From IMG/VR virus record IMGVR_UViG_3300050122_000263, positions 434,001 to 498,000 of that record: a DNA stretch of 64,000 nt; one strand, given 5' to 3'. A model generated the notes under the pieces. The model searched no databases. It was given only the letters and a program-made list of their open reading frames with translations, and was not told where the DNA came from. Positions 33,362-55,119 of this stretch are shown here, in pieces. The translations under genes were made by a program, and so were the position numbers. The number at the start of each line of letters is the position of its first letter. Position 1 is the stretch's first letter.

Positions 33362-34153
33362 CTATGGATTCTGTTGAACTGGATCCCGTGCACCAAGCTG
33401 CAGGCCCATTCCCACTGCGATGGCTTGTTCAGCAGCAGTAAGAGGTAGTTCAATTCCTGCCTCCTCACGAGCAAATACATAAATAGCTCCGTTCTCCTGA
33501 TAGATGAGAAAATTGCGTTGAATCTCTCTATAAACCGGGTTGCCACGTACCTCTGGATGTTGAGTCGACCTGACATGTAGGCGAACAGCACCATTGTCTG
33601 CGGGTGCGTGTGCTACAGCTTCAGCGGTGCGAATATCGACATCGGCTTGGGCGATCACGGCTGCAGCTTGATTATCTTCATCTGCCTCAGCCTCGGCCAT
33701 AGCGTCCTGATCCACAGTGGTATTGATTAAGATCTCTCTCACCTGTTGAAAGTAGCGCTGCCAATCTATCTCAGCCTCGTCGATGAAGGGTTGGCGTTGT
33801 TCCTGCGTCATCTGGCCCCATTCCTCTCCTATCGTGAGCAGTTCCTCCACTGGATCATATGGAGGTTCTTCAGCCATAAATTGAGCTATACGGCCTTTAG
33901 CGTAGTAGGAGACAGCCGGCTTGGGCTTAGGAAGATCAAAGGCGTGGATATCTTCGATCGTTCCTCTCACCATTTCAGCTTGATCCTTGGCATCAAGCTC
34001 AAAGACCATGCGAGCTCCAACTAAGTTCCTATGGGCATAGCAGAAGAACCGAATATTAGGCGCCTCATTGTGAGTCACGCAGAATAAGGCAGTGACATGA
34101 CATCCCTCAGCTTGGCAGATGATTTCTCCACTTGGTGTGATTGTTTGCTCCAT
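33362..34153 (-). CDS. Zn-finger + HMG-box-like protein with C-terminal shared module; tandem paralog of 34412
   Basis: CQAEGCHVTALFCVTH...CYAH; KPKPAVSYYAK...ELLTIGEEWGQMTQEQRQPFIDEAEIDWQRY fits the HMG-box helix pattern. Confidence 0.7.
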   Translation of the reverse strand: MEQTITPSGEIICQAEGCHVTALFCVTHNEAPNIRFFCYAHRNLVGARMVFELDAKDQAEMVRGTIEDIHAFDLPKPKPAVSYYAKGRIAQFMAEEPPYDPVEELLTIGEEWGQMTQEQRQPFIDEAEIDWQRYFQQVREILINTTVDQDAMAEAEADEDNQAAAVIAQADVDIRTAEAVAHAPADNGAVRLHVRSTQHPEVRGNPVYREIQRNFLIYQENGAIYVFAREEAGIELPLTAAEQAIAVGMGLQLGARDPVQQNP

Positions 34154-34411: not shown

Positions 34412-34972
34412 TCAGTAGTCAGCATCGACTTGATGCTGGGCTTTCTCAGCTCCTGCTTCCTCAAGTAACTGCGCGTCTATTTCTTCACGTATCGCCTTAA
34501 ATAGCTTCTCTTCCACTTCCTTATCCACCTTAACTAAGGGATGAACCAAAACATCCTTTACCTGGTGAACGTAATGGTGGTACTCTACTCCATCTTCATA
34601 AAAGAAAGGTTGACGTTGATGCTCATTCATTTGAGCCCATTCCTTCCCTATCTCAAGAAAATCTCGTGAAAAATTATACACAATATCCCTAGGATGCTTA
34701 TCCCTAAGCTGAGTCATACGGAACTTGGCATAACAAACGATAGATGGATTGCGCGTTCCAAGAAGATATAAGTTCCTGAGCTCTCCTCTTGCCATTTCAA
34801 CAAATGTGATCTCAAACCGAGCGTCCATGTTGCTAAAAAACGCACCCAAATGAGATTGGCAATAGAAACGAATATTGGGTGCATCATTGTGAGTCACACA
34901 GAAGAGGGAGGAAGTGCTACATCCTTCAATTTGACAGGTAATCTCTTCACCTAATGCTAAAGTCTGGTCCAT
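34412..34972 (-). CDS. Zn-finger + HMG-box-like protein; tandem paralog of 33362
   Basis: CQIEGCSTSSLFCVTHNDAPNIRFYCQSH; FLEIGKEWAQMNEHQRQPF. Confidence 0.7.
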   Translation of the reverse strand: MDQTLALGEEITCQIEGCSTSSLFCVTHNDAPNIRFYCQSHLGAFFSNMDARFEITFVEMARGELRNLYLLGTRNPSIVCYAKFRMTQLRDKHPRDIVYNFSRDFLEIGKEWAQMNEHQRQPFFYEDGVEYHHYVHQVKDVLVHPLVKVDKEVEEKLFKAIREEIDAQLLEEAGAEKAQHQVDADY

Positions 34973-35141: not shown

Positions 35142-36284
35142 ATGTGGCAAGCTGTTCAAACTCCAACTCGTGAAGGCCTGGCCGTAATGACCGTTGTACA
35201 GATTAAGGAGATTGCTAAGCAGTACCAAATACAAGCCCCAAGTAAGCTGAAGAAAGCGGAGCTCATTCAATATATCTTGGGTAAGCTGCAGGAGCGAAAC
35301 ACAGGCACAGTTCGGGGTGAGAACCTCCCTGTGCGCTATGACGAGCTTGTGCCAGTTTACATGGATTTGTCAGAGTATCAGAAATACGCCTCAGAAGAAC
35401 AACCGGCATGGCTCATCCATCTACATCTCCATGGTTACGCAACCGTACCAATAGCTGGTCTAGATGTGGCCTGGGCTCAGAGCAAGTTCTTTGACTTCCT
35501 AGAGTTGTGTTCTGCCAACTTCAAACGCCAGGATCCAACTACCTGGACCAGACATAATCTGCCACCCTTGTTACATGGCATCTTGAAGCATTATTGTGGT
35601 CACACAGAATTACAATGGGTGGTGAGGGAGTTATGTACCCCCATCTTCGCCAAAATCTGGAAGGTGGCGGAGCGTGATCTTCTCAGCTCCTTCGATGGTA
35701 TCAGCTTCCGTCCCCCTGATCTTAAACAAGCTGTTTGGAAGTCATGGCTACATAATGATCAGCATCGCAATGAGCACGGTTTCTGTTGTGTGCAAGGAGT
35801 AGCCACCCTCATGGAATGCGGCGCGCAGGATGGTGGTTTGGTTGTGTTAGAGGGGTCCCATCACGTGTTTGAAGAATATATGGCCAGACACCCTTGCGAC
35901 AACCTCAACTTTACCAAGGCGGATCTCAATGATCCAGCCCTACAAGGCCGTAGACGCTTGAAGATCTGTGCTCCAGCTGGCAGCATTCTACTCTGGAGAT
36001 CAGACATGATGCATGAGTCTAGCTGTCCTCAAGGCCAAATACCCAGGATGGGCCTCTATATGTGCCAACAACCAAGGCGAGGAGCAGACCAAATCACGCT
36101 CAATAAGAGGATAGAAGCTTATCAGAAAGGCAGAGTCAGCTCTCATTCCTGTTATGGGCCTTGGTTCAGCATCAATCCTGAGCATCCTCGCACATGGGGC
36201 TCGGAGGTGAACACTCCCACAGTCATTGAGATTGCAATGGTGCAACCTGGCTCACTGAGAGCTCGCCTGATCGGCTATGATTAA
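35142..36284 (+). CDS. Fe(II)/2-oxoglutarate dioxygenase (PhyH-like) with N-terminal Rho-N/SAP-like helical domain
   Basis: WLHNDQ (HxD), CVQG, GGLVVLEGSH, AGSILLWRSDMMHES and R in PRMGLY; N-terminal MTVVQIKEIAKQYQI...KLKKAELIQYI. Confidence 0.82.
   Translation: MWQAVQTPTREGLAVMTVVQIKEIAKQYQIQAPSKLKKAELIQYILGKLQERNTGTVRGENLPVRYDELVPVYMDLSEYQKYASEEQPAWLIHLHLHGYATVPIAGLDVAWAQSKFFDFLELCSANFKRQDPTTWTRHNLPPLLHGILKHYCGHTELQWVVRELCTPIFAKIWKVAERDLLSSFDGISFRPPDLKQAVWKSWLHNDQHRNEHGFCCVQGVATLMECGAQDGGLVVLEGSHHVFEEYMARHPCDNLNFTKADLNDPALQGRRRLKICAPAGSILLWRSDMMHESSCPQGQIPRMGLYMCQQPRRGADQITLNKRIEAYQKGRVSSHSCYGPWFSINPEHPRTWGSEVNTPTVIEIAMVQPGSLRARLIGYD
36225..36284 (+). repeat. 60-bp direct repeat, copy 1 (3' end of the dioxygenase)
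   Basis: 52/60 identical to 37132-37191. Confidence 0.9.
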
Positions 36285-36288
36285 AAAA

Positions 36289-36312
36289 TTGTAGATATTT
36301 AAATATCTACAA
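36289..36312. terminator. Perfect 24-bp palindrome after the dioxygenase stop
   Basis: ttgtagatatttaaatatctacaa. Confidence 0.75.
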
Positions 36313-36327
36313 CTTCAGAAATCGCAA

Positions 36328-37047
36328 ATGGAAGGAAGCCGTCATCGTCACGGTAAACATCGCAAGCGTCACGGAAAGACTATTAAGGCTCGCAAGGTTG
36401 TATGTGACAAGTTGATTGTTGATGAGCTCTGGATTGATGGTGAGGCTATGGATATCAGAGAATTAAGAGAGAAACTGTTATTCCGTCATATTCGCTTGTT
36501 GCCCGGACTGAACCACGTTAGACAAATATCTAATTTCCTACCAGTCATCCCGGCAGGTACTAGTGCCCAAGGGGGAGGTGGATTGTCTTTTCCGGTTGCG
36601 ATGATCAACTCAAGTGGAACCCGCGTTCCATTACGGGAGGCGAAGGCAACTTTCAATTATTCAGCACCAGGAAATAAGCAATACTATGCAGTACTGGTCA
36701 TCCCAACCAGTTCCAGCTATCCCGACGGAGCGTTCATCGATCTAACCAACAAATCTGTTACTTCTGCTGATCAAGTGACACAGGCTGATGTATCGAAGTT
36801 TTATCTGTATGATAGTGGAGTGACACAATCTACAAGTCAACCTATTGATGTGACCCTGTCCGCAGATGAGGGACAATATCTACTGGATCTCTCCGATGTG
36901 ACCCCACCTCCAGGAGTTATTATTGCTTCTGGATCGATTCAACCTACCTCTGGCGGCGTCTACCTTGTATTCGTAGCTGCTAGTACTGGCACTGATCCTA
37001 TCTCTGGTAACTTTAGTGCTAGTAATGTGAATTATACATATCAGTAA
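36328..37047 (+). CDS. Hypothetical protein with His/Arg/Lys-rich leader and beta-rich C-terminal domain
   Basis: 239 aa; MEGSRHRHGKHRKRHGK leader. Confidence 0.75.
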   Translation: MEGSRHRHGKHRKRHGKTIKARKVVCDKLIVDELWIDGEAMDIRELREKLLFRHIRLLPGLNHVRQISNFLPVIPAGTSAQGGGGLSFPVAMINSSGTRVPLREAKATFNYSAPGNKQYYAVLVIPTSSSYPDGAFIDLTNKSVTSADQVTQADVSKFYLYDSGVTQSTSQPIDVTLSADEGQYLLDLSDVTPPPGVIIASGSIQPTSGGVYLVFVAASTGTDPISGNFSASNVNYTYQ

Positions 37048-37086
37048 ACTTAACAGAAAAGCGATAGTAGTATTGAGAATATAAAG

Positions 37087-37113
37087 GATCATCTCATAAC
37101 CGATGAGATGATC
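37087..37113. terminator. Hairpin downstream of 36328..37047
   Basis: gatcatctcat-aaccg-atgagatgatc. Confidence 0.7.
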
Positions 37114-37131
37114 TAAAATATGCCGCTCATG

Positions 37132-37191
37132 ATTGAGCTTGCATAGGTATAAGCTGGCTCGTTGAGAGCTCGCCTGATCGGCTATGATTAA
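37132..37191 (+). pseudogene. Decayed duplicate of the last 20 codons of the dioxygenase (direct repeat copy 2)
   Basis: Translates as IELA*V*AGSLRARLIGYD* vs IEIAMVQPGSLRARLIGYD*. Confidence 0.85.
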
Positions 37192-37214
37192 AAACACCTC
37201 ATATGAGGTATTTT
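37191..37214. terminator. Hairpin sharing a 19-bp core with 40921-40948
   Basis: aaaacacctcatatgaggtatttt. Confidence 0.7.
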
Positions 37215-37328: not shown

Positions 37329-40229
37329 ATGAAGGGCAAGAAGTGTCAATGCGACAAACGCACTGAGAAGCTGAAGAAGCTGAGCAAAACCAAGACTGTC
37401 AAGCCTGCGCCTAAGACCAAGGAGCCTAAGGCTGCAGCCAAGACGGAGCAAGTCAAGAAGTGCTCCACCCAGGCTCCAGCCAAAACAGTGGTCAAGTGCA
37501 AACATGGCAAGAAGCATCAGCCCAAAGAGGTTGAGGCCACCTTAACATCTGATCTCTTGGTCAATAACACCGTCTTTGTTGATACTCAGTTCGGCAGCAA
37601 TGTGACCGGCATCCGAGAGGATGAGTCGAGACCAGTACAGACCATAGCCCAGGCTGTCTCTATCGCTATTGCTGGGGATACCATTTATGTACAACCAGGT
37701 GACTACAATGAGAGCGGCTTTGTCCTCAAGGATGGAGTGAATTACTATTTCACTGAAGGTGCCAGTGTGATTGGAGCTTCAGGCTCAGTCTTCACAGACA
37801 CAGGTGCTGCTGCGCCAGTCACAGTCACTATCACTGGCTATGGCCGTTTCAGCTCTTCCGATGGACCCATCCTGTCACTGAGTCAAGCCTCTACAGTGAC
37901 CCTGCAGGGAGATTCATTCAGCGCCACTGGCAGCCCCGCATTGATTGAGATAACTTCCGCCTCAACAGCCACTCTCAACGTAAAGAGCACTTCCCTAACT
38001 GCTACTGGAACTACTCAGCTCTTACGCATCACTGGAGCTGCAAACATCACTGCCCAGCTGGGCAAGCTCAGCGCTGAATCTCAACATATCTTCATTTCCG
38101 ACACTGCTTCTGGGCGGGCCAATGTACAAGCCAACTCCATCAGTGGTGGTCAGGATGACGTGGCTGGAGCAGGCGCTATCTTCGTAGCTAGCAATGATTT
38201 TGTCTTGTCGGTCAGTGCCCAGACCTTTGAGCCGGTCACTACCACTCATGCTATTCAAGTGCTGGTGGCAGCTACAGCCCCAAATAACACTCGCTGCCAG
38301 TTCAACTTCCAATACGTGAAAGTGGCAGGAGGAGTGCTCCGGGTGGCTGGATCCAGCTCGGCAGCTCGCAGCCAGTCTGCCACTCAACCTGCCGCGCAGT
38401 CCCTCATGCCTGTTACCCAGTGCCGCAACCGATCTCTCACCCAGTTTCCCGCCCCCACTAGCCAACTTCTCAACCAGCTCTCCAGCCAGTTCAAAACACA
38501 AGGTGTGCCTCATACAGCTGAGGTTGGTGTGTCATCGCTTCTTGACCAACCCCGCGTGAACCTCAATGTTCATAGGCTGCTTTCCAGTTCTCCAGATGTG
38601 TCTGCTTTCGACCTAGCCAGTAGCATAGTTAATCTCAACCTGGATTTCTTTTTCTACGAGTTGGGTGATGACACATATGCCTTCGTCTTTGCTGAGGGTG
38701 TCCTTGTGGCACTCAATTGTCAGCAGCTCGGCGCTTCAGCCGGGGGAGCCTCCCCAGGTATGTTTCGCGTGATTGGATCCACTGATCCCAGTGCACCCAC
38801 CATGGCAAGGCTGCAGTCCAATCTGATCTTCTCACCAGGTACCATGCTGCACGAGACAGACGATAATCTTAACGTTACTCTGAGGACAGAGCAAATGGTT
38901 ATTGTGGTGCCGCCAGGGGTTTCTGCAGCCATAATCAATGGACAGAACTTGTTAACCATCGACATGCTGGTGATCTACCCTAATGGTGATCCATTTGTGG
39001 GTTCACCAGTTCCAGTCTTCGATATCAGCAACACCTATGCGATTCTGCAAATCGGTGTGATGCTGTACAACATCAGCAACAGTATTGGCATACGTTCTCG
39101 CAACTCTTCTGTCACCTACGCTGGCTCCCGTATTGAAGCTGGGGCTACTGATACACTGATCTTTGATGTAGGTGGTGAGTTGAATCTGCGCCTAGACAGT
39201 ATCGGCGCTTATGCAGGTGGTAACGTCATCTCGGTCAGTGAGGTTGGCTCAGCTAATGTCAACATCAACAACATCTACGTGGGAGGCAGTGGCTACGGCA
39301 TCCTGCTTAATGGAGGCGAGAGCTCAGGCGGTCATCTAAATGGATTTATCTCCATCCTGGGCACTACCCTGGGCCCAGCCATCAGGAGTACCAGTCAAGG
39401 CATTATCCATCTCCTTTTCAACACCATTGAGACTCAGGGTGGCGATGGCATGGGTGGTTTTGGAGGAATCTGTATTGACCTGCCTGGTAAGGGTGACACT
39501 TATCTCATTGGTAGTCGCATCAATCTTAATTATTGCCAGACCGGCATTACTGTTGGAGATCCTTTGGCGGAGGGAGATGGAGCTCTTCTCACATTGAGAG
39601 TGGGTGATATCTACTCCAATTTGGCGGAAGACATTATCCGTATTAACGCACCAGGTGGCGGGGCTGTGCTGGACTTCCAGACTGTGCGCAGTAATACCGT
39701 GACACACGCTGGCATCTGGGCTAGTGCTGGCTCGGTTGAGATTACGGGAGGCACACTACAGGTCAAATCCTTCGTGACTGATATCTACCCTACTGGTATT
39801 CTGGTGGATGGCGTTACTCACTTCAACGCCAACATAGGTTCAGTGCTAGTCACTGGTCCTGCTATCTACGTGAGCACTGATAACCAGTTCTGGTATAAAG
39901 CGGTGCGTACTGAGGTGGAAGGCCCCGCCAACCACAACGTCATTACTGTGGAGGCACAAAATGAATACGCCCAATACACCTTCGGTGGCTACATGAGGAC
40001 CAATGGGCCCAATACAGTGGAAATAGTTGGAGCTTTCACCGCCAACTTGAGATTCTCAGGCTCTACCTTCGTCTCTGATTCTAGTGGTGGATACAGCATT
40101 CTCAACAGCACGGCCAACTCAGCTAGGGCTACCATCCAGCAGTCCATCGCAACCAACGATGTCAGCTCAAACGTCAATATTGTGCCCAATACATCCATCG
40201 TGCTAGTGGTAGACTCCCAGGTCTCCTGA
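37329..40229 (+). CDS. Large right-handed beta-helix (pectate-lyase-like) surface protein with Lys-rich leader
   Basis: VFVDTQFG...PVQTIAQAV...GDTIYVQPGDYNE is the typical start of a beta-helix domain; long G/S/N/I-rich beta repeats; 966 aa. Confidence 0.78.
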   Translation: MKGKKCQCDKRTEKLKKLSKTKTVKPAPKTKEPKAAAKTEQVKKCSTQAPAKTVVKCKHGKKHQPKEVEATLTSDLLVNNTVFVDTQFGSNVTGIREDESRPVQTIAQAVSIAIAGDTIYVQPGDYNESGFVLKDGVNYYFTEGASVIGASGSVFTDTGAAAPVTVTITGYGRFSSSDGPILSLSQASTVTLQGDSFSATGSPALIEITSASTATLNVKSTSLTATGTTQLLRITGAANITAQLGKLSAESQHIFISDTASGRANVQANSISGGQDDVAGAGAIFVASNDFVLSVSAQTFEPVTTTHAIQVLVAATAPNNTRCQFNFQYVKVAGGVLRVAGSSSAARSQSATQPAAQSLMPVTQCRNRSLTQFPAPTSQLLNQLSSQFKTQGVPHTAEVGVSSLLDQPRVNLNVHRLLSSSPDVSAFDLASSIVNLNLDFFFYELGDDTYAFVFAEGVLVALNCQQLGASAGGASPGMFRVIGSTDPSAPTMARLQSNLIFSPGTMLHETDDNLNVTLRTEQMVIVVPPGVSAAIINGQNLLTIDMLVIYPNGDPFVGSPVPVFDISNTYAILQIGVMLYNISNSIGIRSRNSSVTYAGSRIEAGATDTLIFDVGGELNLRLDSIGAYAGGNVISVSEVGSANVNINNIYVGGSGYGILLNGGESSGGHLNGFISILGTTLGPAIRSTSQGIIHLLFNTIETQGGDGMGGFGGICIDLPGKGDTYLIGSRINLNYCQTGITVGDPLAEGDGALLTLRVGDIYSNLAEDIIRINAPGGGAVLDFQTVRSNTVTHAGIWASAGSVEITGGTLQVKSFVTDIYPTGILVDGVTHFNANIGSVLVTGPAIYVSTDNQFWYKAVRTEVEGPANHNVITVEAQNEYAQYTFGGYMRTNGPNTVEIVGAFTANLRFSGSTFVSDSSGGYSILNSTANSARATIQQSIATNDVSSNVNIVPNTSIVLVVDSQVS

Positions 40230-40920: not shown

Positions 40921-40948
40921 AAAAAATACCTCATATGAGGTATTTTTT
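40921..40948. terminator. Perfect 28-bp palindrome between convergent genes
   Basis: aaaaaatacctcatatgaggtatttttt. Confidence 0.8.
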
Positions 40949-40957
40949 AATAATAGG

Positions 40958-49573: not shown

Positions 49574-50905
49574 TTATTTCTTGTAGAAGTACTTGCCATA
49601 CAACTTTAAGTTCTGGCCATGAGTGTTCTGTGTGTCACCGGTGATTATCTCGAAGGGTTTGCAGCGCCAACGTGGTAGTGACTGAGTTGGGCTGACTTGC
49701 TTAAGTGTCAACTGCGTGTAGTTGTCCATATTCTGACCCCTGATTGCACAATTACGGCAGACAACTTCCTCATTTTGACTCCAATAAGCCTTGTTAGGGG
49801 TGAACATCTGACCATGCACGGTACAGCCAACGCCGCAGCTGTGGCAGTAGATGACCAGCTGCCCTTCACATATGTCGTAGTAGATTGTGCTACCCGAGTG
49901 AGTTGTTCCTGGTTGGTAGTTAAGACGTTGTATCCTCTCAAAGCGCCCCTGAATATAACGCATGTACAGGAGTAGGCGTTTGAACTTATGTTCAGGACTC
50001 TCCGTGCTGGCTATGAGGGGATGAGGAGGTGCTCCAGTTAAAGGAGTTTGCTTCATCTCCCCAACTTCAGCCATAATATGTGGGAAGCGACTCTGTAGAG
50101 GTGAGATAGCCCTCAACAGTTGACTCATCCTCTTCCGCAGGGAGTGCGATGAATCCCAACCTATAGCTTCACAGATAGACTCGACTTCGCCTAAGAAGAT
50201 CGGGAGAGCGTCGCCCAACTCTGCTGGGCATAGCCCCTGCAAACCCCTCAGGGGTTTGCTTAGTGCGTCAAGTGGTGAAAGTAGTTGTGACGCCTGGTTA
50301 TCTCGCTTTAATGAGAGGTCTAGGCTTGTTAGATATCGGTGTTGTTTCCACTCTGGGTAGCCCTGGGCTTGTGCAAGCTTATCTATGAATGATGGATTAG
50401 CTGTTATGAGTGGAGAGGCATCAATAGTTCTGGTTTGTGGCGGAGATTCCACTACTTCAATTAAAACCTCGTTGAGATCAGGACTGGGCGAGTCAAACCG
50501 TATATTAGTGTTATTATCCACCAAGCAGCTAGGGCTGAGTGAGCGCTCTGAAACTTGCTCTAGAGCTTGAGAGGTTTGTTCTGGGGGCTGAGCTGAGATC
50601 TGCTCTGAAATCTGTTCAGGTGAATCAGAGCGCGTGAGTGATTCTCCACTGCTAGATCTATCAACTTCCGCCTTACTTAGGGCATCATACTGAGTCAGGA
50701 TGACTCTCACAGATCCTTTCCTGGCAGCAGTCTTAGTGACAGGTGTCTTAGTATTTCCTTCTGATCTTGTCCTGCGCTGAACCTCTATCCATTTTCCCTT
50801 AGGGCTGTTGCGTCTCATTTTCCAACTGTTGTTCCTACTAGCCTTTGTGCTGCTTTGATGTTGTTTAACGACAGTGGGGTGAATCAATCCCACCACTCTA
50901 CTCAC
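49574..50905 (-). CDS. Hypothetical protein with disordered basic/Ser-rich N-terminus and C-terminal Zn ribbon
   Basis: YCHSC...VCRNC; start uncertain (GTG; MRRNSP is an alternative). Confidence 0.65.
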   Translation of the reverse strand: MSRVVGLIHPTVVKQHQSSTKASRNNSWKMRRNSPKGKWIEVQRRTRSEGNTKTPVTKTAARKGSVRVILTQYDALSKAEVDRSSSGESLTRSDSPEQISEQISAQPPEQTSQALEQVSERSLSPSCLVDNNTNIRFDSPSPDLNEVLIEVVESPPQTRTIDASPLITANPSFIDKLAQAQGYPEWKQHRYLTSLDLSLKRDNQASQLLSPLDALSKPLRGLQGLCPAELGDALPIFLGEVESICEAIGWDSSHSLRKRMSQLLRAISPLQSRFPHIMAEVGEMKQTPLTGAPPHPLIASTESPEHKFKRLLLYMRYIQGRFERIQRLNYQPGTTHSGSTIYYDICEGQLVIYCHSCGVGCTVHGQMFTPNKAYWSQNEEVVCRNCAIRGQNMDNYTQLTLKQVSPTQSLPRWRCKPFEIITGDTQNTHGQNLKLYGKYFYKK

Positions 50906-54615: not shown

Positions 54616-55119
54616 ATGACATGTGTTGGTAAAGCTCTAACTCTCGGTATCGGCTCTCTATTTGCAGCGCTTGGTATAACATTAATTGTGGTTAGTGTGG
54701 TTCTCTTCCATAACAGTGAGATACCCTGTCTAGTTGAGACCATGATTGGCACAAGCATTACAGGTGATGAGAGCGGATGTTCCGTCTATGGGACTGTGAC
54801 TGTTGGACTTCAGAACAATCAAAGTGTTACCATCGAGCATCTGGTCTGTAACTACAAGTTCAAATGTCCCACTATCGTGGCTGATGGCTGTGAAGGAGGC
54901 TACTTTCAGATCGGTAAGAATGCATATTGCTATATGAGCTTGGGCAAACTGATGGTTCAGCGCTCTAGAGGCGATCTCTCGGCTGGCTTGGTTTTCCTGA
55001 TCGTGATGGGCTCTGTGCTTATTGCAACGGGTATTGCTGTCAGCACTACTCTCTGGTGTATAAACTACCGAGGGCGCCGGGCTCACGGTGTTGCTGAGCA
55101 TGAGGTCCTGATTAATTAA
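54616..55119 (+). CDS. Two-TM protein with Cys-rich loop, family member 3
   Basis: CLVETMIGT...CSVYGTVTVGL...C...C...CEGGYF.IG..AYCY..LG. Confidence 0.75.
   Translation: MTCVGKALTLGIGSLFAALGITLIVVSVVLFHNSEIPCLVETMIGTSITGDESGCSVYGTVTVGLQNNQSVTIEHLVCNYKFKCPTIVADGCEGGYFQIGKNAYCYMSLGKLMVQRSRGDLSAGLVFLIVMGSVLIATGIAVSTTLWCINYRGRRAHGVAEHEVLIN

What the first reader, a model, noticed from the sequence alone, without database searches (positions are those of the whole stretch)
36225..37191. Single gene bounded by a 60-bp duplication of the upstream gene's 3' end
Seen: the last 20 codons of the dioxygenase (36225-36284) recur 907 bp downstream (37132-37191, 52/60 identical). The second copy has two in-frame stops. 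Each copy is followed by an A run and a hairpin. Between them lies one complete gene (36328..37047) with its own hairpin. Inferred: this is the footprint of an insertion at a gene end with target duplication, like attL/attR after integration. No integrase is visible in the window.
Basis: partly seen in the sequence, partly recalled or inferred. Interest (0 to 1): 0.72.

Follow-up and report, generated by a model that had tools for sequence, protein, structure and literature searches.

The report
Gene-end duplication scar around an inserted orphan gene
In an uncultured giant virus from peat, a 63-base copy of the end of a dioxygenase gene sits dead just after the neighbouring orphan gene; this is most likely a recombination scar from how that gene arrived, not the footprint of an integrase-driven mobile element.

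Summary
The last 31 nt are identical and all 8 mismatches lie in the first 32 nt. The repeat has no other copy in the 582-kb genome, is far beyond chance, and is identical in several independent peat-metagenome assemblies.

Copy 1 is the true 3' end of a SAP/HeH + PhyH dioxygenase. Copy 2 is a dead relic with two in-frame stops. It keeps a two-codon 'GS' insertion seen only in this lineage's dioxygenase, so it derives from this virus's own gene.

The 844 bp between the copies carry one real gene (239 aa). It is an orphan whose only detectable relative is a distant paralog elsewhere in the same genome.

Every gene end here follows a stop, A-run, hairpin pattern, which holds genome-wide. The A runs and hairpins are therefore ordinary gene ends, not att features.

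I found no integrase, terminal inverted repeats, poly(A), extra copies, empty site or circle.

Best reading: a recombination or break-repair scar next to a terminator palindrome. A second case in the genome supports this: a 44-nt stop-anchored duplication around a 14-nt filler. Interest is modest.

The parts
35142..36284 (+). Dioxygenase gene (380 aa): N-terminal SAP/HeH-like DNA-binding motif plus PhyH (phytanoyl-CoA dioxygenase-like) domain. Single copy in the genome.
   Evidence: ORF; Pfam Rho_N/HeH/PhyH; 46 homologues at 47% identity or less, mostly on large virus-like contigs; single copy.
36225..36287 (+). Repeat copy 1: the last 19 codons, TAA and AAAAA of the dioxygenase. This is the functional copy and encodes the family-conserved C-terminal motif IEIA...LRxRLIGYD.
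   Evidence: C-terminal conservation in alignment A1.
36289..36312 (+). Hairpin A: a perfect 12-bp palindrome 4 nt after the dioxygenase stop, and 15 nt before the next gene's ATG. Terminator/polyadenylation-type hairpin.
   Evidence: I3; z -3.7.
36328..37047 (+). Gene239 (P0001, 239 aa): an orphan with a basic His/Arg/Lys-rich N-terminus and a beta-rich remainder. Its only relative is paralog P0049 at G000 243290-244279 (28-30% identity).
   Evidence: No Pfam family. GC3 0.38 against a genome mean of 0.46 +/- 0.06.
37086..37114 (+). Hairpin C: 12-bp stem, gene239's own terminator-type hairpin, 39 nt after its stop.
   Evidence: (z -4.7).
37132..37194 (+). Repeat copy 2: a dead relic of the dioxygenase 3' end, with in-frame stops at 37144-37146 and 37150-37152. 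It retains the lineage-specific GS codons. The last 31 nt are identical to copy 1.
   Evidence: tblastn relic hit.
37191..37214 (+). Hairpin B: A-run, 5-bp GC-containing stem, T-run, directly after the relic. The same hairpin sequence recurs at window 40922-40956 and at G000 309162-309188, with no homology beyond the hairpin.
   Evidence: I6; z -1.5.
37329..40229 (+). Downstream gene (966 aa): Lys-rich N-terminus, no Pfam family, one paralog at G000 89940-93539 (34% identity).

Best explanation
The repeat is the scar of a recombinational gene gain, not a site-specific one, at the 3' end of the dioxygenase gene of a giant virus (Nucleocytoviricota). A DNA break or replication stall beside the gene's palindromic terminator was repaired by end joining or template switching. 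An equivalent route is one homologous plus one illegitimate crossover with a sibling genome. The repair duplicated the last ~63 nt of the gene and placed an ~844-bp cassette between the two copies: hairpin A, the orphan gene239 and hairpin C. The upstream copy still completes the working dioxygenase. The downstream copy lost its function and picked up two stop codons, and it still sits in front of a terminator hairpin (B). Shown: the repeat, its polarity (copy 2 is the degenerate one), its origin from this lineage's own gene, the unrelated interior, the genome-wide hairpin rule, and a second stop-anchored duplication in the same genome. Inferred: the break-repair mechanism, the order of events, and that gene239 arrived rather than always being there. 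The 31-nt exact core in direct orientation predicts that homologous recombination can delete gene239 as a 907-bp circle while leaving the dioxygenase intact.
For: The repeat is real, unique and significant. The relic keeps the two-codon GS insertion that is absent from all 23 aligned homologues, so it comes from this lineage's own gene. Copy 1 keeps the family-conserved residue I364 and has an intact frame, while copy 2 has L there plus two stops, so copy 2 is the decaying one. The interior shows no nucleotide or translated similarity to the dioxygenase above shuffles, which excludes a simple 907-nt tandem repeat. Gene239 belongs to its own two-member family. The genome obeys a hairpin rule, 318/468 against 51/468, as described for Mimiviridae and Pithovirus (PMC4402537). 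The right edge of the repeat therefore abuts a DNA palindrome. A second case exists in the same genome. The last 13 codons plus stop of ORF G000 276182-277000 are duplicated perfectly (44 nt) around a 14-nt filler, and the second copy again abuts the terminator hairpin. These two are the only outliers among 468 gene tails (scores 43 and 39.5 against a 95th percentile of 11.5). A third gene, ORF106 at G000 292836-293156, is bracketed by ~270-nt diverged repeats of a whole intergenic region including a hairpin. There is no integrase, and there are no TIRs or extra copies.
Against: No empty site, deletion joint or circle was seen. However, only k=31 contigs at about 6x depth were available, and they cannot show these forms. 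There is no close relative to give the ancestral state: the best is 47% protein identity with no synteny. The mismatches are not spread as simple neutral decay predicts: 8 in the first 32 nt and 0 in the last 31 (P = 0.003; 0.03 using only the 5 changes attributed to copy 2: I to L, P to A and the three stop-creating bases). Explaining that needs an extra assumption: gene conversion, junction-proximal mutagenesis, donor/recipient divergence, or function. No donor locus for the cassette flanks was found. Gene239's composition is only mildly unusual (GC3 1.5 SD low).
Confidence: 0.5

Rival explanations
1. Larger tandem duplication followed by deletion. A segment containing the whole dioxygenase (with or without gene239) was duplicated in tandem, and later deletions removed all of the second dioxygenase copy except its last 63 nt.
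For: Tandem duplication is active in this neighbourhood and genome. The two genes just upstream (33362-34153, 34412-34972) are tandem paralogs, and there are several other tandem paralog pairs. The patchy-to-perfect identity gradient could be the surviving tip of a longer decayed copy; tblastn stretches the relic by 5 weak codons.
Against: It needs at least two or three events, one of them a deletion ending just after gene239's hairpin. No other dioxygenase fragment exists anywhere in the genome. The hairpins after the two copies are unrelated. The 44-nt/14-nt case shows that short tail-only duplications do arise directly.
Confidence: 0.22
2. Site-specific integration. Gene239 is a small non-autonomous cassette inserted by a recombinase supplied in trans. 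That recombinase would recognise the 31-nt core at the dioxygenase end. The imperfect 32 nt would be an arm carried by the element.
For: An exact core next to imperfect flanking similarity is typical of attL/attR pairs at gene 3' ends (general knowledge). Mismatch clustering is significant. A Logan unitig runs exactly from core to core (L031), which is compatible with a circle but equally with the linear form.
Against: The 582-kb record has no tyrosine or serine recombinase, though it is estimated to be only 61% complete. The core occurs only twice, and nowhere else in IMG/VR or the JGI metagenome contigs. The cassette is single copy, and its only paralog has no such flanks. The imperfect arm carries the host gene's own lineage-specific insertion.
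Confidence: 0.08
3. The duplicate is kept because it is functional. The dioxygenase tail may carry a regulatory signal, such as a promoter-like element or part of a 3'-end processing signal, that had to be duplicated when a gene was placed between the dioxygenase and the 966-aa gene. Selection would then preserve the 31-nt core.
For: The 31-nt core is perfectly conserved while the rest decays. A promoter-like motif AAATGAT(T) clusters at -36 to -52 from start codons. The tail's TATGATT lies at about -53 from gene239's ATG, whose whole upstream spacer is only 43 nt.
Against: The relic lies 135-197 nt upstream of the 966-aa gene's ATG, outside the motif's usual window. The match to the motif is imperfect, and the sequence is also explained by the conserved Y-D-stop codons. 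Hairpins in this system are not conserved in sequence (PMC4402537).
Confidence: 0.08
4. Assembly artefact or chimera.
For: It is a metagenome assembly, and the repeat length is close to typical k-mer sizes.
Against: Contigs from separate samples and assemblers cross both copies with 0 mismatches. The core k-mer depth is twice that of the flanks.
Confidence: 0.02

Closest known systems
PeSL-mediated modular shuffling and mini-circles in T4-type phages (Arbiol et al. 2010, PMC2839356)
   Same: Orphan genes in a large DNA virus are bracketed by short direct repeats that include or abut terminator stem-loops. Recombination between the repeats can add or remove a single gene and would release a small circle.
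   Different: PeSLs are a dispersed family of promoter plus stem-loop cassettes. Here the repeat is a one-off copy of a coding 3' end, the hairpins after the two copies are unrelated, and no circles or alternative arrangements were observed.
attL/attR of integrative elements that target the 3' end of a gene
   Same: A direct repeat covers a gene's 3' end. The upstream copy keeps the gene intact and the displaced copy decays. An exact core is flanked by imperfect similarity.
   Different: There is no integrase, the cassette is single copy and only 0.84 kb with one orphan gene, and no empty site or circle was found.
Break-repair insertions with flanking duplication and filler DNA (end joining, or template switching at palindromes)
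   Same: A short tandem duplication has unrelated DNA captured at the junction, next to a palindrome. The 44-nt/14-nt filler case in the same genome has exactly this form.
   Different: The mechanism is inferred from the layout only. Capture of a whole expressed gene with its own hairpins is larger than typical filler.
LINE-1-mediated gene capture in poxviruses (PMC9578705)
   Same: A single gene was added to a large DNA virus genome, flanked by a target duplication ending in an A-rich site.
   Different: The insert has no poly(A) tail at its 3' end (37100-37131). The 63-nt duplication is much longer than usual. The gene has no cellular homologue.
Hairpin rule of Mimiviridae and Pithovirus transcripts (Byrne et al. 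2009; PMC4402537)
   Same: 68% of ORFs here are followed within 80 nt by a perfect palindrome of at least 7 bp. This explains the hairpin after each repeat copy and after gene239.
   Different: It explains the hairpins, not the duplication. Transcript ends were not mapped here.

Membership tests
Integrase-type integrated element (attL/attR) | Direct repeats (att core) at both ends | tested here: met
   31-nt exact core within a 63-nt repeat.
Integrase-type integrated element (attL/attR) | Tyrosine or serine recombinase in the element or genome | tested here: not met
   The insert encodes only P0001, which has no Pfam family. PF00589 and PF00239 are absent from the 582-kb record, while the control genomes were positive. 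The record is estimated to be 61% complete.
Integrase-type integrated element (attL/attR) | Empty site in relatives, or an excised circle | tested here: inconclusive
   No contig shows an empty site or a junction. However, only k=31 contigs at about 6x were available, and there is no relative closer than 47% protein identity.
DNA transposon / MITE with target-site duplication | Terminal inverted repeats and a short (2-15 bp) TSD | tested here: not met
   No inverted repeat joins the ends of the insert. The duplication is 63 nt.
DNA transposon / MITE with target-site duplication | Multiple copies in the genome | tested here: not met
   Insert and flanks are unique. The only paralog is 28-30% identical in protein.
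Retrotransposition-mediated capture (LINE-1 type) | Poly(A) at the 3' end of the insert, and a cellular source gene | tested here: not met
   The sequence before copy 2 has no A tract. There is no homologue outside this virus in libraries of 5.8 and 1.84 billion proteins.
Simple tandem duplication (907-nt unit) | Similarity along the whole unit | tested here: not met
   Local nucleotide score 19 against shuffles 21 +/- 2. No translated match with E below 0.4.
PeSL-like regulatory-cassette shuffling | The flanking repeats belong to a dispersed family of promoter/stem-loop cassettes | tested here: not met
   The 63-mer occurs only at these two places. Dispersed intergenic repeat families do exist elsewhere in the genome, and one gene (ORF106) is flanked by a duplicated intergenic region.
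Hairpin-rule gene ends (Mimiviridae-like 3'-end signals) | A palindrome shortly after most stop codons | tested here: met
   318/468 ORFs against 51/468 random sites, median 17 nt after the stop. Hairpins A and C have z-scores of -3.7 and -4.7. Cleavage and polyadenylation were not tested.

The most novel reading that the evidence does not exclude
Terminator palindromes may act as recurrent break points in this giant virus lineage. Repair there would duplicate the adjacent gene tail and capture DNA, from a 14-nt filler up to a whole orphan gene. The resulting direct repeats would make the new gene reversibly excisable as a mini-circle. That would be a giant-virus counterpart of PeSL shuffling and a concrete route for orphan-gene turnover.
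Probability: 0.15. Interest if true: 0.65.

Novelty: new member of a known kind. Interest (0 to 1): 0.3.

Why it matters
Giant virus genomes are full of lineage-specific orphan genes, and how these get inserted is poorly documented. This locus, together with the 44-nt/14-nt case in the same genome, preserves the junctions of such an event. It ties them to the palindromic gene-end signals, which gives a hypothesis testable with deep reads or an isolate. On present evidence it is one or two scars in one clonal metagenomic population. It is useful as an example of gene turnover, but not evidence for a new mobile element.

Tried and rejected
- **Empty-site comparison with relatives.** Only the same virus was found in IMG/VR. 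The 31-mer is absent from the JGI metagenome contigs.
- **Dioxygenase homologues.** They reach at most 47% identity. In four relatives the downstream neighbour differs each time (243-aa unknown, 170-aa on the opposite strand, HtrL_YibB, Cu-oxidase). None shares synteny with this genome or has a tail duplicate.
- **Read-level test for deletion or circle joints.** Only Logan contigs were served, and no joints were listed. The result is uninformative because k=31 breaks at the core.
- **Function of gene239.**
  - No Pfam family.
  - The profile search found only itself and its paralog.
  - The AlphaFold2 model was unusable, mean pLDDT 33.7, so no fold search was run.
  - ESM Atlas feature hits to CRESS-DNA virus capsid clusters scored only 0.79-0.81, and shuffled or reversed proteins reach 0.8 about a third of the time. 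Structural TM-scores were 0.40 or less. I do not claim any fold from this.
- **Simple tandem-duplication model.** Rejected.
- **Donor locus for the cassette flanks.** None found.
- **Rfam.** No family in the window.
- **Bacterial-type promoter/terminator scan.** It only re-found the hairpins.
- **Shared hairpin B at three sites.** Homology is limited to the hairpin itself.

Full report
**Context**

The window is bases 434001-498000 of a 582-kb IMG/VR virus record. The record carries an NCLDV major-capsid domain. It also has collagen-like fibre proteins and many orphan genes. Sequencing runs that hold it are peat metagenomes. It is therefore an uncultured giant virus (Nucleocytoviricota). GC is about 46-47%, and no tRNA genes were found.

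**The observation**

- The repeat is as described: 36225-36287 and 37132-37194, 63 nt, 907 nt apart, 55/63 identical.
- The last 31 nt are identical. They were never matched in 100 shuffles.
- In a genome-wide self-comparison the pair scores E = 3e-11 and has no third copy.
- Copy 1 is the end of ORF 35142-36284. This ORF is a 380-aa protein with an N-terminal SAP/HeH-like motif and a PhyH dioxygenase domain.
- Copy 2, in the same register, reads I-E-L-A-stop-V-stop-A-G-S-L-R-A-R-L-I-G-Y-D-stop. The stops are at 37144-37146 and 37150-37152.
- Hairpins follow each copy and the intervening gene.

**Is it an artefact?**

No. JGI contigs from two other samples cross both copies without a mismatch (L029 and L030). 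A further contig, L011, crosses the left junction. Logan k=31 contigs end exactly at the 31-mer. The core unitig has depth 14 against 5.6 and 7.1 in the flanks, as expected for two copies per genome. All assemblies are identical, so they sample one clonal population.

**What the pieces are**

- *Dioxygenase family.* The dioxygenase has 46 homologues at 47% identity or less, most of them on large virus-like metagenomic contigs. Their C-terminus is highly conserved (IEIAPLNP-LRRRLIGYD).
- *Origin of the relic.* This virus alone has two extra codons (GS) before the LRxRLIGYD motif, and the relic has them too. The relic therefore descends from this lineage's own gene, not from a foreign homologue.
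- *Which copy decays.* Copy 1 keeps the family-conserved residue I364 and has an intact frame. Copy 2 has L there and two stops, so copy 2 is the decaying one.
- *The interior.* The interior (36288-37131) shows no nucleotide or translated similarity to the dioxygenase above shuffled controls. This rules out a plain 907-nt tandem repeat.
- *Gene239.* The gene at 36328-37047 (P0001, 239 aa) is real. It has a paralog elsewhere in the genome (P0049, G000 243290-244279), with 28-30% identity spread over the whole domain. Neither has any other relative in 5.8 billion or 1.84 billion proteins.
- *Fold of gene239.* It remains unknown. The model had pLDDT 33.7, and the Atlas feature similarity to CRESS-virus capsids is at chance level.

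**The A runs and hairpins are ordinary**

Of 468 ORFs, 318 have a perfect palindrome of at least 7 bp within 80 nt after the stop, against 51 of 468 random positions. The median distance from the stop is 17 nt. TTAAAAAC-type words are among the commonest around gene ends. Distant relatives' dioxygenase genes also end in TAA, an A-run and a hairpin. This is the hairpin rule described for Mimiviridae and Pithovirus (PMC4402537). These features say nothing about integration.

**Tests of the mobile-element reading**

- There is no tyrosine or serine recombinase in the record.
- The insert has no terminal inverted repeats and no poly(A) at its end.
- There are no further copies of the cassette, its flanks or the core.
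- No contig shows an empty site or an altered neighbour.
- The closest relatives are too distant to give an ancestral state. They share no synteny with this genome, and each has a different gene after the dioxygenase.

**Other cases in the same genome**

I aligned every gene tail to its downstream 4 kb. Only two of 468 tails were outliers: this locus (score 43) and ORF G000 276182-277000 (score 39.5). The 95th percentile was 11.5.

- *Second stop-anchored case.* In ORF G000 276182-277000 the last 13 codons plus stop are duplicated perfectly (44 nt). Only a 14-nt filler lies between the copies, and the second copy abuts the terminator hairpin. The same structure is present in the second assembly. 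It has the same topology as the finding, with a tiny insert.
- *Third bracketed gene.* ORF106 (G000 292836-293156) is bracketed by ~270-nt diverged repeats of a whole intergenic region that includes a hairpin.

**Mechanism**

The simplest account is break repair or template switching beside the terminator palindrome. It would duplicate the adjacent gene tail and capture DNA at the junction. A formally equivalent route is one homologous and one illegitimate crossover with a sibling genome that already had gene239 after the dioxygenase.

One observation needs an extra assumption. All 8 mismatches lie in the first 32 nt (P = 0.003, or 0.03 using only the five changes attributed to copy 2: I to L, P to A and the three stop-creating bases). 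Four explanations are possible and I could not separate them:

- gene conversion seeded near the hairpin;
- mutagenic synthesis at the junction, which the 44-nt case hints at, since it also has patchy similarity just 5' of its perfect block;
- pre-existing divergence between donor and recipient in the less-constrained codons;
- selection on the core. A promoter-like AAATGAT(T) motif clusters at -36 to -52 from start codons, and the dioxygenase tail resembles it at -53 from gene239. But the relic lies 135-197 nt upstream of the next gene's start.

**Verdict**

The attL/attR analogy fails its defining tests. A larger duplication followed by deletion remains a live rival.

The nearest functional analogue is PeSL-type modular shuffling in T4-like phages (PMC2839356), but this locus does not belong to that class. 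The finding is a tidy example of gene turnover in a giant virus. It comes with one testable prediction, repeat-mediated pop-out of gene239. It is not a new kind of element.

Noticed in passing
G000 276958-277059 (outside the window; locus L022): A perfect 44-nt duplication of the last 13 codons plus stop of ORF 276182-277000. The copies are separated by a 14-nt filler, and the second copy abuts the terminator hairpin. The same structure is in the second assembly. It has the same topology as the finding, but with almost no insert.
   Followed up: partly
G000 292543-293400 (locus L023): A 106-aa orphan ORF (292836-293156) is bracketed by ~270-nt diverged direct repeats of a whole intergenic region, including the upstream gene's hairpin (alignment score 135 against shuffles 31 +/- 5).
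   Followed up: partly
window 50205-50262, and G000 182058, 184578, 192339, 170087(-), 289164(-), 338131(-): A dispersed structured repeat. A conserved GAGCGTCGCCCAAC-NNNN-GTTGGGCATAGCCCCT (itself a small stem-loop) is followed by a hairpin. The hairpin's sequence differs at every copy but always pairs, and it is followed by GGAGCG. There is no Rfam match in the window.
   Followed up: partly
G000 76805, 178774, 292616, 392258(-), 502888(-), 503229, 503602: A dispersed intergenic repeat beginning AAAAAGTTCAGCTTAAGTGT...TTTTGATACAGC. Two perfect 45-nt copies lie 373 nt apart upstream of ORF 503684-505150.
   Followed up: no
window 33362-34153 and 34412-34972 (- strand): Tandem paralogs just upstream of the dioxygenase: 38% protein identity over the first 154 residues, and 75-78% nucleotide identity near their 5' ends. 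The longer one has an HMG box.
   Followed up: partly
genome-wide; e.g. upstream of window 54616-55119: A promoter-like motif AAATGAT(T) occurs 27 times in the 150-nt upstream regions. About two thirds of these lie 36-52 nt upstream of predicted start codons, and it is about 15-fold enriched.
   Followed up: partly
window 37191-37214, 40922-40956; G000 309162-309188: The same terminator hairpin sequence (A-run, ACCTCATATGAGGT, T-run) recurs at three unrelated gene ends, with no homology beyond the hairpin.
   Followed up: yes
whole record: IMG/VR labels both records (582 kb and 391 kb) 'provirus', and the parent contigs are about 619-620 kb. The dioxygenase sits at a different offset in the two records. 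The assemblies are therefore broken or trimmed at different points, possibly because of a circular or permuted map or over-trimming by the classifier.
   Followed up: no
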